Below the pieces are notes generated by a model that saw only the letters and a list, made by a program, of their open reading frames with translations, made no database searches and was not told the DNA's origin. A stretch of DNA of 55,662 nt, the filler included, from Platydemus manokwari (lineage: Eukaryota): the NCBI GenBank assembly GCA_037951405.1. It is 5 parts of 5 records of this genome, joined end to end, with 100 filler letters (N's around TTAATTAATTAA, not from the genome) between each part and the next. Parts side by side here need not be neighbours in the genome. Positions count along the whole stretch, not along the records: positions 1 to 12,370 come from JBBMOY010168899.1; 4 more parts are not named here. The stretch is one strand, 5' to 3'. Numbering within the stretch: the stretch's first letter is position 1; every line of letters begins with the position of its first letter. The translations under genes and the position numbers were made by a program. Below are positions 2,001-12,370 of the stretch, piece after piece.

Positions 2001-5000
2001 GTGTCCTTATTTAATCGGTTGAAAATCATAACCATATGATGATTTCTCTATTCAAAATGAATCGATTTTTTTTCAATCGATACATTTTTCAATGATACAC
2101 ATCAACATTAATATTGTAATGATTGTTTACCTGAGAGACTGGTTTAGGTCATATCACTTCAGTCTTGGTAGGAACGGAATGACAGATATTTAAGGAGTTA
2201 CGAATTCAGTCATTTAGAATATTTCTGGTCTCACAGTTGTCAATACAATGAGAAGAGTACTGCGAATATTTACATAACCGGTTTTGCACTAAGATCTGTG
2301 TGTAAGATCTGTTGATTTTAATTAAAATTATTTACTATATACTTTCTGAAAGGGGAATTGAGCTTAGTATTTGAAGATTTCTATGTTCAGTGTTCTATTT
2401 GGAGAATAATATAATTCACAATATTTGTTCTTGATCACTGAATCATTGATTTGGTTGGTATAAGGTTTAGCTATAGTTGCTAGTTGCTTCTTTATTTTAA
2501 ATTGGCCAAAGAACGACGTTACATTTCAGTTTTCACAAATTGTATAATTAATTTAACCTTGCTTAGCTAATAAATTAAGTAATTTTTTGGACTCACTCGA
2601 TCTGTCGATAAGTATAATCGATCGAAGAGTAATTTCGATCGAATCTGTAATTAATAATCAAGTTGAAGACAAATTCCAGCTTGATTATTTGTGCTTACCG
2701 AAGTCAAATTCGTCTACCACCATTTACAGTATAATAAAGTTGAACATAGGTTTGTTCAAATTTCAAATCGTTAGCCTGTTAATTAAGGGTATTATAATTT
2801 ATTTTCAGTTAAGCCAAAAATCATAAATCAAATTAATAGCTCCATATGAGAAGAATGAAACATTACATGATCTTGGAGTAAGAAAAAAACACACGAATTA
2901 AATATGCAATATAATTCATGGCATAGGAATAAAAAGGAAAGTTTTTCAGCAATCAACAACAATGAAATAACTATGCTTAGTTTAATAAAGAAGGTCGTTG
3001 ATAAGAAAGAGGTAGCGTAAATTTAGTCAATGATGAATATGTTTAACGAAGAAAACATTAACATTGACATACAAAGTGTCATAAAACATTCTTGATTTAC
3101 ATAGAAATGGAGATAAATTTAGCAAGACTAACTCGACAGGAATATCGGGATCCAGATATCGATTCCCTTATTAAGTGGATGTATCGGATATGTAAGATGA
3201 ATTTCAAAATAATATCATTTAAAATAATGGGAATAGACAAAGGATAAATGAGCTGTAAATTGATGGATCGGAAATAAACAAAATTGTAAAAGTCTTACCA
3301 CATGAGTATGAATGATCGATATTATGTTGAAGGCTCAGCATATAAAATATGGTAGGAAATTCGAACAAAAGCATGCAAGAGAAATAATATATAACTTAAA
3401 AATAAACAGATTAATGCATGACATTGCAAAGGAAGTAGATTAATATCTGAAGTACAGTAGAAGCAAGTTTCCATAACCAATAATTAAATATTTGGTGTAA
3501 AGATATGTTAATCCAGGATTAACACTATTGTTTTTGAGGTTGGGTCTTATTTTTATTATGATTCACTGTATATTTTTCAACGCTATTTGATTTATTTAAA
3601 ATTTATTTGCGCAATATCAGAGTCAAGTCAAACTACTGGAGTCCTTATAACCCACAGGTAAACAACAAACCTATTATTTTTTGGTATTCTTTCGCGTCAA
3701 TCGTATCGATCCTCGTGTGAAGACGGGGTGAACGGCTCAACGATATTGCTTGAAAATATCAGTTTCAATTTAGCCTTATGCACCTTTCAAAAAGGTGATG
3801 AAATGATAATGAAATGTACTGTTAATGAAATGAACTTTATGACACTCGCCAAAACCAACTATCCTTTTAAAATACGCTTTTATTATGAATTAAACAATTA
3901 CAAAATGACTACCTGTATACGATCAATTTATAGAACAATGTTTCTATACATTTAAACAACAAGATGTTAACAATTCCGGGGAAGCTCTGGTTAATAGTGT
4001 TTCAAATAGGAGTAAAACCAATCAACCAAGATAATTGGGATTAACCATACAGATATGAAAAATATGCGGTTGTTTATAAATTATAGATGATTTTATAATT
4101 ATTAAATCTTACTTTATCTTCCCATACAATTGATGTTCTTCCAGTATGAATACTAGGCATATACAAAGTCTGGATGTCTCTGCAATAAATTCCTCTATCA
4201 TAGAGAGAAATTCTCTATGTTAGCTATTCTAATGCATGGGTTTTTATGTTTAATCCATGGCTATTAAATTTTATGCATGAATATTTATTTAATGTATAGC
4301 TATTTATTTTATTCTAGGTGTATAGTTTGTCTGCAGTGCGCGATAATACATAACGGGTTATTTATTATTATTATTTTATAGCTATTTTTTATTGTAGGGA
4401 AAATTTTAAAGGATTTTCAAATTGTAATATTTCAAAGGATATTTTAAACGGGTAATACACTATTATTTTTGGTCTAATTTATATTGTATTTAATTTATGT
4501 CAATCGAGAAGCTTTCCAGATTTTTTTACAACAAAAATATCCAATATTATTTCATGAGGGATTCTTTTTATACATCGATACAATGGTGGGTTAAATACAC
4601 AATATCAAGGATAAAGATAAAATAACATGCATATAATTCTCATAAAGTACACGATCTTTTTCAAAACCTTAACAAAAGGAACAATAAATGAGTCAGAAGA
4701 AGGAAATGAAAATGGACAGATCAATACAATCTTTAAGAAAACTTCTCTGCCTATATTAGCTGAAGGAATTAGATGAGGAATTAGGAAAAATAAAGACTCA
4801 CTAATGCTGAGTGAAATTGTATTTGAGAATATAGATTATGAGGCATGTATTAGTTATTTTAGGAATGGAATTACATATTAATATGACTGCCGAAATACAC
4901 GATTAAAGTAGTTTCATTGACTACAAAACTCACTGGAATATTAGTGGAGAAATAACAACCAATGAAATAGTTAAGGAAATCCAGATCCTAAGTATTAGGG

Positions 5001-6334: not shown

Positions 6335-7495
6335 TTATCGAATAACGAATTTTGCATGCATTTTTTCGGATTCTGTTACCGGAAAAGAATTCGTGTCATT
6401 CGATGAATCAATTGGATCCCGGCTAAAGATATCCGATCGTTCGAGACTTTTAATTGATAACAAAGTGTCGTTTCTAACATTATACATCAAATCAAAACTA
6501 TCTCTTTTAATCACTTTCATAACTTTGGATACGATTGTCATTCTCAATGGTTTTTGAATTATAAAAAACGGTAAAAATGAAAATGAACAAAACCCTAGAG
6601 GAAAGAAGAAATGAATTTTAATAGCAAAATTAAAGTACTCCTTACTATATCGAAATGCAGGATAATATCTAACAATAGTTAGGGGAAGAATAAAAATTAT
6701 AAGCATAATATATAATGCTAAATTAGTATTGTCTCTCATTTTATTGGTAATAATGAAAATATTTTTAGTCGATAAATTTGACAATCCAACTCCTGCATTA
6801 GGATCGATTTTGAAAAATTTACTAATAATGGCCACAAAATTTAAGGATATCATCACTATAGGAATTAAATTTAAAAATAATAAATCAAATATAATGTTCA
6901 GATGAAACACATCATATTTGAAGAGAACATAACCATAAAACGTAGAGTTGTACGAACATTCGAAATAATATGAAATCTCTTGTACTTCTAAACATACCAT
7001 AACAAGTGAGATGAATAATATAATAGCTACCATATCTACTGTATGTTTTTTATAAATAAAAATCCGTCCTTCAAAACAATGGAAATAACTTATTATTTTC
7101 TGATAACCAAAAAGACAGATGATTAAAATTTGTGTATACAGAAAAAAATTTGACATTAATAATCCAGAAATAGAATACAATACTAAAGCATGAGATGCAG
7201 TCATTTTTATCGTAAAGATGACTGGAAATACAAAGAAAAAATAAAAAATCGAATTCACACAAAACGCTGATGCTAAAATTAAAAAATGTGGTTGGATATA
7301 AATGATGGATTTTTCAGATAACGAAATCAAGAGAAAAACATGTCCAATTAATCCAATGCTTACCATTGGGATCCATAAACCATGTTGGAGATATTGAATA
7401 AACATGTCGTTATTATCGAAATAAATCAAGTTTCGTCGGCATTGCCGTAATTCATAACTTCCGTTCGATAAAGAATAAACCGGTAATATCGACAT
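6335..7495 (-). CDS. Divergent rhodopsin-like (class A) 7-transmembrane GPCR, single exon
   Basis: 386-aa uninterrupted ORF in AT-rich DNA with about 7 hydrophobic segments. TM1 IGLIGHVFLL (GN-like), TM2 ILASAFCVNS, TM3 end GYQKII, TM5 NLIPIVMI, TM6 FILPLTI, and a hydrophilic Ser/Thr-rich C-tail. Confidence 0.75.
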   Translation of the reverse strand: MSILPVYSLSNGSYELRQCRRNLIYFDNNDMFIQYLQHGLWIPMVSIGLIGHVFLLISLSEKSIIYIQPHFLILASAFCVNSIFYFFFVFPVIFTIKMTASHALVLYSISGLLMSNFFLYTQILIICLFGYQKIISYFHCFEGRIFIYKKHTVDMVAIILFISLVMVCLEVQEISYYFECSYNSTFYGYVLFKYDVFHLNIIFDLLFLNLIPIVMISLNFVAIISKFFKIDPNAGVGLSNLSTKNIFIITNKMRDNTNLALYIMLIIFILPLTIVRYYPAFRYSKEYFNFAIKIHFFFPLGFCSFSFLPFFIIQKPLRMTIVSKVMKVIKRDSFDLMYNVRNDTLLSIKSLERSDIFSRDPIDSSNDTNSFPVTESEKMHAKFVIR

Positions 7496-9743: not shown

Positions 9744-9906
9744 TGTTAATCACAAGACTTTTTAATAAGGGAACCTTTATTTAGAACAATTAGAATGTTA
9801 TATATCATCACATTTCTGATGATGTAATCAGATCATGGGAGGTTAAATGGTTAGTATCAACTGATAGTTGTGCAATCACTAATCTCATTTACGCATCTCC
9901 CTTACA
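9744..9906 (-). repeat. 3' LTR of the Gag-only element
   Basis: Minus strand reads TGTAAGGGAG...GATTAACA and contains AATAAA. Direct repeat of 10874-11036. Confidence 0.92.
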
Positions 9907-9927
9907 TCCCCTCTATTTTAAAATCTT

Positions 9928-10874
9928 TCAACCATAGTCATTTATGGCATTGAATTGTCTCTGCCCATCTGATTTTGAATAAAATGATCCTTTCGACTGT
10001 GAATCCCATCTGTCTCGATTCAGAAAGTTCTCGAAGTATCGTCGTGAGGGTGCACTGTCATCCTTTTCTCTGCAGTATCTAGTACTTGCTTGGTTGGATA
10101 CTCTCCATTGATATTGAAAATGTCCATTTCTACAGCAGTCAAGGCAGTTTACATTGTTGCATTGAGCTCTGATGTGTCCAAGTTGACCGCAAGCCCAGCA
10201 TCGTCGAGTTTTTTTCCACTTGTTTCGATATCGCCCGTTTAGTGGCTGCCTTTTCGTATCATGCTGACGACTTGAGAGTTGGCTTTTTCCAATTGGAGCA
10301 TTCCACTGCTTAGCATTCTTTGTTATATTTGCATATGACACTTTCTTAAAAATAGCAGCAAGTGATTGTTCTCCCTCGATTTCTTTTTGGATGTCTTCCA
10401 GCTTCTGAATGATGTCTTTTGCTCGATGCACCGTTCTTACTTCCCGCATTTTCATCTCTTTTTTTTTATTTCCACGTCTTTAATTGCGTGTTGAGTCAAA
10501 AACATCATCAATAACGGCTTGCTTAATTTATGCCTAAGAATATTGTCTGTTAATTTCTCCATTTTTTCGAAGAATTCATTGCAACTTTCTTCCTTTCCTT
10601 TCCGGTATCTTAATGCTTCATCAAGATCTGTAGCGAGGTTCATTTTAGGCTCGAACACTTTTCTAAGCCTCTCTTCAAAACCTCTTCCTTCGGTGGCCTC
10701 ATATATTGGCAGCAGTTATATTGAGATAAAAGCCTTTACCAGTATTTCTTCAAATTCTGTTGAAAGTTGAGTCAATTCGAAGAATCTCTTCATTTCAATG
10801 ATGAACTTGTCCAAATCATCTTTTGACTTCAATTGTTCAGGATGTTTGATATAACTCTGGACGTTGGTCGCCAT
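9928..10874 (-). pseudogene. gag: Retrotransposon Gag with two zinc knuckles, disrupted by one in-frame TAA and one frameshift
   Basis: ATG at 10874 gives MATNVQSYIKHPEQLKSKDDLDKFIIEMKRFFEL...; TAA at 10716-10718; the same frame continues as ORF 10452..10658; frameshift near the A-run at ~10455-10468; then CWACGQLGHIRAQC (CX2CX4HX4C) and the degenerate CLDCCRNGHFQYQW. Confidence 0.85.
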
Positions 10875-11036
10875 GTTAATCCTAAGGCTTTTTAATAAGG
10901 GAACATTTATTTAGAACAATTAGAATGTTATGTATCATCACATTTCTGATGATGTAATCATATCATGGGAGGTTAAATGCTTATTGACAACTGATAGTTG
11001 CGCAATCACTAATATCATTTACGCATCTCCCTTACA
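10874..11036 (-). repeat. 5' LTR of the Gag-only element
   Basis: Direct repeat of 9744-9906, followed immediately on the minus strand by the TGG-initiated PBS. Confidence 0.92.
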
Positions 11037-12370
11037 ATTAGATTATTATTATTATTACTATTATTATGTTCTAATAGCATTATTATAATTCCAAGTTATA
11101 ATGCACTTATTTTCCTGCTAACATTTTAAATCGTCAAACTAATTTCAAACCATTTGATTTATGAGTTCCAAGATGTCAAATGAATGAGAAAAATATATTT
11201 TGTCGTTTTCACAAAATCTTGTTGTAAATTTTTGCTCACCAAACATAAAATTTGATATGTATGCTGGTAACCACCCGATGTTGCTTTCCATATTTTGTTG
11301 GAAATGTTTCAATTAAATGAAATTAGATATTTATCAGAATAATAATCGTGATGCAACCAAAATGAGCTACATTTATTGATTATATTTATAAAAATTTATT
11401 TATGAAAAGAGCACACTGATAATTATTTGTGTACGATTTCTGCTCATATTATGAACAATTATACGATTTTCTGAAATTTCATCATTTCACAAACGTCCAA
11501 CCCGAATAACAAACCGATTGATGACAAATGTTTAGCAAATTAAGTCAAAAAAATATAGGATCGACATCCAATACGGAAATGTTATTGTAGTAGACAGTGT
11601 CGATGTTTTGAAACATCATCAACACAGAATCATACACACAGTTAATTTATATTTCCAATATTTGCATTTTTTGAATTGAAAATGTGTATTTTGCTTGAAA
11701 ATAAATGCCATTTGACAAACATACACACGCAAACACCGATATATATTTTCCCAACATTTTTTCACAGATAAAATTGAATTAAAAAATTCAATATTAATTT
11801 TATTAAACATTTTTTATCGTAAAAAATCCATTAAAAATATATTTATTTGACTTTACTGACTTATAATGACGTAATTAATTGATAAAAATATTCCCGCTTA
11901 TGTTCCCACACATTAATTTGTAATTATTTATGTTCGTTAAATTATTTTTTATCACATCACAATCATTGGAAATGTTTACCAAAATGTGATCGATAAAAAA
12001 TTCAGTTAATATTAAAATATGTAATTTTTGTTAGAATCGACAAATGTTTCTGGGAAGATTAATATTATTTTCAGCTTAAGTTAAGAAAAAGGGTCCTTTG
12101 ACCTATTTTCGATATAATGAAATTTCCCGCACGAGATAATTTTTAATGACTTTATTTTGTATATAACTGCTCAGTTTCATTAATTCATATAATTCAGCTA
12201 ATATCTCATTTTTTAAGATGTCTAATAGAGACAAAACATACTTTTAAGACCAAGTTCCCATTCTAATCAGAACACTTCTATATGATTATTTGAGTTTTTA
12301 AATTTAAATTTTTATAATTATAAATCAAGTTAGTTAATTACAGACATGTTTAATAATATCATTGGTTATT

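What the first reader, a model, noticed from the sequence alone, without database searches (positions are those of the whole stretch)
9744..11036. Minimal Gag-only LTR retroelement: LTR-PBS-gag-PPT-LTR in 1293 bp
Seen: two 163-bp TG..CA LTRs (12 substitutions, no indels), a PBS, a PPT, and a gag frame that fills almost the whole 967-bp interior and stops about 10 nt before the PPT. There is no protease, RT, RNase H or integrase sequence. Known: Gag-only non-autonomous LTR elements (TR-GAG type) are described mainly from plants, and TRIMs usually encode nothing. Inference: this may be an animal family of 'satellite' retroelements that supply their own capsid and borrow Pol in trans. This copy is inactive (TAA plus frameshift).
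Basis: partly seen in the sequence, partly recalled or inferred. Interest (0 to 1): 0.75.

Follow-up and report, generated by a model that had tools for sequence, protein, structure and literature searches.

The report
Pol-less, decayed Ty3/gypsy deletion derivative
This is a real but dead 1.3-kb remnant of a small Ty3/gypsy-type LTR retrotransposon that kept its two LTRs, primer sites and most of gag but lost all of pol, and nothing available here shows it ever spread as a "Gag-only" family.

Summary
On the minus strand lie two 163-nt TG..CA LTRs (12 substitutions, no indels), a PBS directly after the 5' LTR, a 314-codon gag frame, and a purine tract abutting the 3' LTR. The gag frame is broken by one TAA and one frame change at an A9 run. 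No pol sequence exists anywhere in the 12.4-kb piece.

The gag belongs to a family of 350-370-aa Gag proteins from metagenome and Logan assemblies. In one recovered contig (L001), such a gag sits in a compact autonomous element of about 4.7 kb per unit: LTR, PBS/gag, -1 frame PR-RT-RH-INT, PPT, LTR.

Against all these relatives, the window's gag lacks the last 36-40 residues, including the conserved "LGAIN" end. It stops right at the junction, with at most 8 codons of pol left before the PPT. So the element is a deletion derivative, not a separately designed Gag-only element.

There is no target-site duplication, which points to rearrangement at this locus. Whether the deleted form ever transposed as a family could not be tested.

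Interest is modest.

The parts
10874..11036 (-). 5' LTR (163 nt, TG..CA), with AATAAA at 10911-10906 and a conserved 7-bp-stem hairpin
10856..10873 (-). Primer-binding site TGGCGACCAACGTCCAGA. The first 9 nt equal the TGGCGACCACGAAGGGAC motif (tRNA-Arg or Trp label in PMC4724089). It lies inside the first gag codons.
   Evidence: relatives keep TGGCGACCAC as codons M-A-T-T
10719..10874 (-). gag piece 1 (52 codons, ATG 10874-10872), 56% identical to P0003
10716..10718 (-). in-frame TAA that breaks gag
10455..10715 (-). gag piece 2 (87 codons, capsid region), 63% identical to P0003; weak Retrotrans_gag hit
10459..10467 (-). A9 run where the gag reading frame changes (frameshift break)
9931..10455 (-). 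gag piece 3 (175 codons): end of capsid, CCHC knuckle 10200-10159, degenerate second knuckle 10146-10105 (last Cys missing), basic tail ending NAINDYG (9951-9931)
9928..9950 (-). deletion junction zone: gag stops (TGA 9930-9928) 36-40 codons short of relatives; at most 8 codons of the pol 3' end can remain
9907..9919 (-). polypurine tract AAAATAGAGGGGA abutting the 3' LTR (L001 has AAAGGAGGGGGA in the same place)
9744..9906 (-). 3' LTR (163 nt, TG..CA), AATAAA at 9781-9776

Best explanation
The element is a dead, pol-less deletion derivative of a very compact Ty3/gypsy-type (Metaviridae-like) LTR retrotransposon, lying on the minus strand.

The parent type is about 4.7 kb per LTR-plus-interior unit. 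It has no internal non-coding DNA: the gag ATG straddles the LTR end and the PBS, pol is read in the -1 frame overlapping the gag end, and the pol stop abuts the PPT.

One deletion of roughly 3.5 kb removed the last 36-40 codons of gag, the gag/pol overlap and essentially all of pol (PR, RT, RNase H, INT). What remains is LTR-PBS/gag(deltaC)-PPT-LTR.

All known cis signals survive (LTR ends, PBS, PPT), so such an RNA could in principle be packaged and copied by a partner's Pol. That step is inferred, not shown.

This copy has since decayed at about the neutral rate: one stop, one frame change, one lost zinc-ligand Cys. The missing TSD says the locus was rearranged after, or instead of, a clean integration. 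I judge a single-locus deletion more likely than an amplified Gag-only family. It could have arisen in situ, during one reverse-transcription cycle, or between two neighbouring copies.
For: Structure.

Gag homology:
- phmmer against 1.84 billion representatives gave full-length Gag relatives of 346-371 aa, with P0003 at E 5e-21 over the whole 175-aa piece.
- Pieces 1 and 2 are 56% and 63% identical to P0003.
- All relatives begin (N)MATT, which is the PBS read as codons, and all end ..LGAIN.

Autonomous relative L001:
- gag 3679-4728, followed by a -1 frame with DTG protease, RVT_1, RT_RNaseH_2, Integrase_H2C2 and rve.
- The pol stop is followed at once by the PPT and a TG..CA LTR that ends ..AACA|TGGCGACCAC.
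- The unit length is 4689 bp.
- Relatives' contigs cluster at 4.4-5.4 kb.

Truncation: the window's NAINDYG aligns to P0003's NAIYDYE, and the following 36 residues are absent.

No pol anywhere in the piece.

Decay: about 2 new stops are expected from half the LTR divergence, and 1 is seen.

TSD: absent. The chance that a 5-bp TSD decays to one match or fewer at this divergence is about 1e-4.

Fold: the AlphaFold model of P0003 is helical over residues 15-185. Its best PDB matches are dArc, Copia, PNMA2 and Ty3 capsids, though weakly, at E 0.04-0.8.
Against: No parent copy from the same genome was seen. The deletion is therefore inferred from relatives that are only 40-63% identical in Gag.

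The breakpoints are unusually neat, sparing the PBS, nearly all of gag and the PPT to within about 25 nt. That is what selection for trans-mobilisation would produce, so it fits a propagating family as well.

The absence of other copies in my searches says little, because the host genome is evidently not in the searchable collections. Even the window's own ORFs are not in the protein collection.
Confidence: 0.6

Rival explanations
1. Member of an amplified, non-autonomous Gag-only family (TR-GAG-like). The deleted form was transcribed, packaged (perhaps by its own truncated Gag) and reverse-transcribed and integrated by a partner's Pol, producing many copies. This would be one old, decayed copy.
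For: All cis elements are retained and the deletion is neat. The gag damage is no more than neutral decay since insertion predicts, so gag could have been open when this copy arose. The structural TR-GAG criteria other than copy number are met.
Against: No second copy was found, though the host genome was not searchable. The gag lacks the family-wide conserved C-terminus and ends at a junction-created stop. There is no TSD to prove integration of this form. Every relative whose context could be read is autonomous or continues into pol (L001, L002).
Confidence: 0.28
2. Chimera of two neighbouring copies. A single genomic deletion ran from the gag end of one full-length copy to the pol end of a second, same-orientation copy downstream. 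That would fuse LTR(A)-gag(A) to PPT-LTR(B).
For: One event would explain both the loss of pol and the non-matching flanks. Head-to-tail pol-LTR-gag order is seen in relative L001, although that contig may be an assembly loop.
Against: It needs two copies close together in the same orientation. No other fragment of the family lies in the 12.4-kb piece. The 7.4% LTR difference is equally explained by age.
Confidence: 0.1
3. Assembly artefact (collapsed or mis-joined repeat), or a host-domesticated gag gene.
For: None specific. Short repeats can be mis-assembled, and gag-derived host genes such as Arc and PNMA do exist.
Against: The two LTRs differ at 12 sites, so they are not a collapsed duplicate. 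The ORF is broken, truncated and still flanked by LTR, PBS and PPT, which is the opposite of a domesticated gene.
Confidence: 0.02

Closest known systems
TR-GAG elements of plants (Chaparro et al. 2015, PMC4350172)
   Same: Short LTR element (<4 kb) with LTRs, PBS and PPT, and with coding similarity to GAG only. It has the same presumed dependence on a partner's Pol.
   Different: TR-GAG is defined with at least 2 copies per genome, and only one copy is known here. The host is not a plant, and that survey found none in Drosophila. This gag is truncated relative to autonomous relatives and is broken.
Autonomous compact Ty3/gypsy-type element on contig Ga0307474_10011309 (L001), and the Gag proteins P0003, P0050 and P0049
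   Same: Homologous Gag with two CCHC knuckles. The gag ATG overlaps the LTR end and a TGGCGACC... PBS. The PPT is G-rich and abuts a TG..CA LTR. LTRs are short, 163 versus about 260 nt.
   Different: L001 carries PR-RT-RH-INT in the -1 frame and the full Gag C-terminus. The window element has neither. Gag identity is only about 37-63%, so it is a different family or host.
TRIM and LARD non-autonomous LTR elements
   Same: LTR-PBS-interior-PPT-LTR without pol. The size is in the TRIM range.
   Different: By definition TRIM and LARD have no coding capacity (PMC4350172 introduction). Here almost the whole interior is gag.
Internally deleted proviruses and retrotransposons that are trans-complemented (for example mouse IAP deletion forms, ETn/MusD). 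From my own knowledge, not tested here.
   Same: Derivatives of autonomous elements that lost coding sequence but kept their cis signals.
   Different: Those are documented multi-copy, active families. Mobility is unproven here.

Membership tests
TR-GAG (PMC4350172) | Element of at most 4 kb bounded by LTRs, with PBS and PPT | tested here: met
   1293 bp; 163-nt LTRs; PBS at 10873; PPT at 9919-9907
TR-GAG (PMC4350172) | Similarity to GAG only; none to protease, RT, RNase H or integrase | tested here: met
   Pfam finds only zf-CCHC and a weak Retrotrans_gag hit. tblastx against autonomous L001 hits gag only.
TR-GAG (PMC4350172) | Redundancy of at least two copies in the genome | not testable with these tools
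   The host genome is not in any searchable collection.
TR-GAG (PMC4350172) | One open reading frame coding a GAG precursor | tested here: not met
   This copy has an in-frame TAA and a frame change, and it lacks the conserved C-terminal 36-40 residues. Other copies, if any, are unknown.
Ty3/gypsy-type LTR retrotransposon (derivative of) | Gag homologous to the gag of elements with PR-RT-RH-INT order | tested here: met
   Gag family. L001's pol has RVP, RVT_1, RT_RNaseH_2, Integrase_H2C2 and rve in that order.
Ty3/gypsy-type LTR retrotransposon (derivative of) | RT/INT phylogenetic placement of this element itself | not testable with these tools
   The element has no pol. The clade (Mag, CsRn1 and so on) of relative L001 was not resolved, because no reference RT set was available.
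Ty3/gypsy-type LTR retrotransposon (derivative of) | Capsid (CA) fold in Gag | tested here: inconclusive
   The model of P0003 has pLDDT 75-87 over residues 15-185 and is all-helical. The top Foldseek hits are dArc2, dArc1, Copia, PNMA2 and Ty3 capsids, but at E 0.04-0.8.
Any integrase-inserted LTR element | 4-6 bp target-site duplication flanking the LTRs | tested here: not met
   In element orientation the 5' flank is ..CTAAT and the 3' flank is GCGGT... Decay alone is unlikely to explain this, at about 1e-4.

The most novel reading that the evidence does not exclude
The deleted form is the founder or a member of an animal Gag-only ('TR-GAG-like') family. Its truncated Gag would end near a possible protease cleavage motif, so CA and NC are kept. 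That Gag would package the element's own RNA while Pol is borrowed from the compact autonomous partner. This would be a capsid-encoding parasite of a retrotransposon outside plants.
Probability: 0.25. Interest if true: 0.55.

Novelty: new member of a known kind. Interest (0 to 1): 0.3.

Why it matters
If the deleted form proved to be multi-copy, it would extend Gag-only non-autonomous LTR elements from plants and brown algae to what is probably an animal lineage. It would also offer a very small system (1.3 kb) for asking which cis signals and which Gag parts suffice for trans-mobilisation.

As it stands, it is a useful annotation: an old, dead retrotransposon remnant. It also points to an unusually compact Ty3/gypsy-like family in which the PBS is read as the first gag codons and the pol stop touches the PPT.

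Tried and rejected
Searches that found nothing or could not be run:
- The search for homologous proteins with the 175-aa gag piece: no hit in the allowed length range.
- The 4-row alignment found nothing in viral or genome contigs.
- An exact 23-nt LTR core was absent from genome and viral contigs.
- Identifying the host through the neighbouring 386-aa ORF failed: no Pfam hit and no homolog.
- Rfam and tRNA scans of the piece were empty.
- Literature searches for animal Gag-only LTR families, and for a PBS overlapping the gag start, gave nothing specific.

Its three pieces were searched separately.

Readings rejected:
- Domesticated gag gene: the ORF is broken and still has LTRs.
- BEL/Pao or Copia origin: the relative's domain order and Pfam families are Ty3/gypsy-like.

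Full report
OBSERVATION

The region holds a 163-nt direct repeat, 9744-9906 and 10874-11036. The two copies differ by 12 substitutions and no indels, giving p = 0.074 and K2P = 0.078. Both copies start TG and end CA.

The element reads on the minus strand:
- The 5' LTR is 11036..10874.
- TGGCGACCAACGTCC follows directly from 10873.
- AAAATAGAGGGGA (9919-9907) abuts the 3' LTR (9906..9744).

The interior is 967 nt. One frame carries 314 sense codons in three pieces:
- Piece 1 is 10874-10719, ended by TAA at 10718-10716.
- Piece 2 is 10715-10455.
- Piece 3 runs to 9931 after a change of frame at the A9 run 10467-10459, and ends at TGA 9930-9928.

The other five frames of the interior have 13-20 stops each.

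IS IT GAG, AND OF WHAT?

Pfam alone is weak: zf-CCHC at E 1e-3 and Retrotrans_gag at E 0.07. A word-indexed protein search of the 175-aa piece found nothing within its length limits.

An exhaustive phmmer search of 1.84 billion representatives gave 40 hits. Several are 346-371-aa proteins that align over the whole query, with P0003 at E 5e-21.

Aligned piece by piece, the window's gag is 56%, 63% and 43-46% identical to P0003.

The family shares these features:
- a helical N-terminal half;
- two CCHC knuckles;
- a basic linker;
- a motif like NAI.D;
- an acidic tail of about 35-45 residues;
- a conserved end, ..(E)xLGAIN.

An AlphaFold model of P0003, built from a 15-row family alignment, is confidently helical over residues 15-185. 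Its best PDB matches are retrotransposon-type capsids (dArc2, dArc1, Copia, PNMA2, Ty3). The E-values are only 0.04-0.8, so I count this as supportive, not decisive. A profile search of PDB sequences matched only nucleocapsid zinc knuckles.

THE AUTONOMOUS RELATIVE

One scan of metagenome contigs returned L001 (Ga0307474_10011309, 6465 bp), which holds a full-length gag relative at 3679-4728.

- Downstream, in the -1 frame and overlapping the last 78 nt or so of gag, lies an ORF with a DTG protease and RVT_1.
- The contig's last 127 nt are identical to 1650-1776. The ORF therefore continues into RT_RNaseH_2, Integrase_H2C2 and rve.
- The repeat unit is 4689 bp.
- The pol stop (3435-3437) is followed at once by AAAGGAGGGGGA and a TG..CA LTR of about 260 nt. 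That LTR ends ..TTAACA|TGGCGACCACGCC.
- The gag ATG straddles the LTR/PBS border, exactly as in the window.

Relatives start (N)MATT because the PBS is read as the first codons. Contigs that carry other relatives cluster at 4.4-5.4 kb.

L002, a decayed copy from the same metagenome, is collinear with L001 past the gag end. L001's flank carries a Tc1/mariner-type transposase, so these are eukaryotic genomic contigs.

WHAT HAPPENED IN THE WINDOW'S COPY

The window's NAINDYG (9951-9931) aligns with P0003's NAIYDYE. The 36 residues that follow in P0003 are missing, and similar stretches are missing relative to every other relative. This includes the LGAIN end and the gag/pol overlap.

The stop comes immediately after. 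Between it and the PPT there are 8 nt. In the frame of the TAA that sits just before the PPT, as in L001, at most 8 codons are open.

tblastx of the whole 12.4-kb piece against L001 matches gag only.

The simplest reading is one deletion of about 3.5 kb, running from the gag tail to within about 25 nt of the PPT. This makes the element a deletion derivative of an autonomous Ty3/gypsy-type element. It is not a lineage with a purpose-built gag.

STATE AND AGE

If the LTR divergence dates the insertion, half of it applied to the 314 codons gives about 35 substitutions and about 2 new stops. The probability of one stop or fewer is 0.35-0.43.

Observed damage is one stop, one frame change and a lost Cys in the second knuckle (GHFQYQ-W against GHFKYQCW). 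The gag may therefore have been open when this copy formed. It has decayed neutrally since, with no sign of selection either way.

THE MISSING TSD

In element orientation the flanks are ..CTAAT|TG and CA|GCGGT... At 7.4% divergence, a 5-bp duplication would retain one match or fewer with probability of about 1e-4.

So the flanks are not those of a clean integration of this unit. Either there was later rearrangement, or the two LTRs come from two copies. This weakens the only local evidence that could have shown that the pol-less form itself was integrated.

FAMILY OR ONE-OFF?

No second copy appears in any of these:
- the window;
- prokaryotic genome contigs or viral contigs;
- the protein collections.

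The host genome is evidently absent from all of them, since even the window's own ORFs are not there.

For a family:
- The deletion is neat and spares every cis signal.
- The gag was possibly open at origin.

Against a family:
- The gag is truncated and ends at a junction-made stop.
- There is no TSD.
- Every relative with readable context has pol.

My split is as follows:
- one-locus deletion, in situ or during a single reverse transcription: about 0.6;
- amplified Gag-only family: about 0.28;
- deletion between two neighbouring copies: about 0.1;
- artefact or domesticated gene: about 0.02.

COMPARISON WITH KNOWN KINDS

TR-GAG elements are defined by four criteria (PMC4350172): at most 4 kb; LTR, PBS and PPT present; similarity to GAG only; and at least two copies. 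That survey found candidates in angiosperms and a brown alga but none in Drosophila.

The window's element meets the structural criteria. It fails the intact-ORF criterion, and the copy-number criterion could not be tested. I therefore do not file it as TR-GAG. It works like one only if it proves to be mobilised.

By definition TRIM and LARD elements encode nothing.

The PBS shares its first 9 nt (11 in L001) with the motif tggcgaccacgaagggac. That motif is labelled tRNA-Arg or, in one database, Trp (PMC4724089). The host's tRNA was not checked.

LIMITS AND RULES FOLLOWED

- The gag was searched only as separate pieces.
- The host organism is unknown. The piece is about 29% GC, and an animal origin was not verified.

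Noticed in passing
window 10856-10874 (-); L001 3700-3725; P0003, P0008, P0010, P0013, P0049, P0050 N-termini: Across the whole Gag family the start codon straddles the LTR end and the PBS (..AACA|TGGCGACCAC read as N-M-A-T-T). In L001 the pol stop also touches the PPT. The autonomous element therefore has essentially no internal non-coding DNA, and the PBS is under double constraint (tRNA pairing and coding).
   Followed up: partly
window 6335-7495 (-): An intronless 386-aa ORF with about 7-8 hydrophobic segments, looking like a 7TM receptor. It has no Pfam hit and no homolog among 5.8 billion proteins, so it is an orphan membrane protein gene or a fast-evolving receptor.
   Followed up: partly
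window 10934-10954 and 9804-9824 (-), LTR positions about 83-103: A perfectly conserved inverted repeat (ATCATCA..TGATGAT, 7-bp stem) is present in both LTRs, about 20 nt upstream of the AATAAA signal. It may be an R-region or polyadenylation hairpin.
   Followed up: no
Gag C-terminal tails of P0003, P0008, P0010, P0013, P0021, P0022, P0049: Two similar short motifs (..A-[AIT]-[IL]-x-D.. and ..LGAIN) bracket an acidic peptide of 35-45 residues. They may be protease cleavage sites. The window's gag ends just after the first motif.
   Followed up: no
L001 1650-1776 = 6339-6465; L001 4750-5032: The contig ends in a 127-nt exact repeat of an internal stretch. This indicates a head-to-tail or circular arrangement (pol-LTR-gag), or else an assembly loop. 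An N-rich array of about 67-nt repeats sits in the pol frame between gag and the protease.
   Followed up: partly
window 11041-11067: An (AAT)n-like microsatellite lies directly against the outer edge of the 5' LTR. It could have obscured or replaced the original target site.
   Followed up: no
L002 383-1328 (-): Next to a decayed copy of the L001 family lies a multi-pass membrane ORF. It is interrupted by or contains an (AATTGAAT)n microsatellite translated as repeated LFNYSIIQ. It has no Pfam hit.
   Followed up: no
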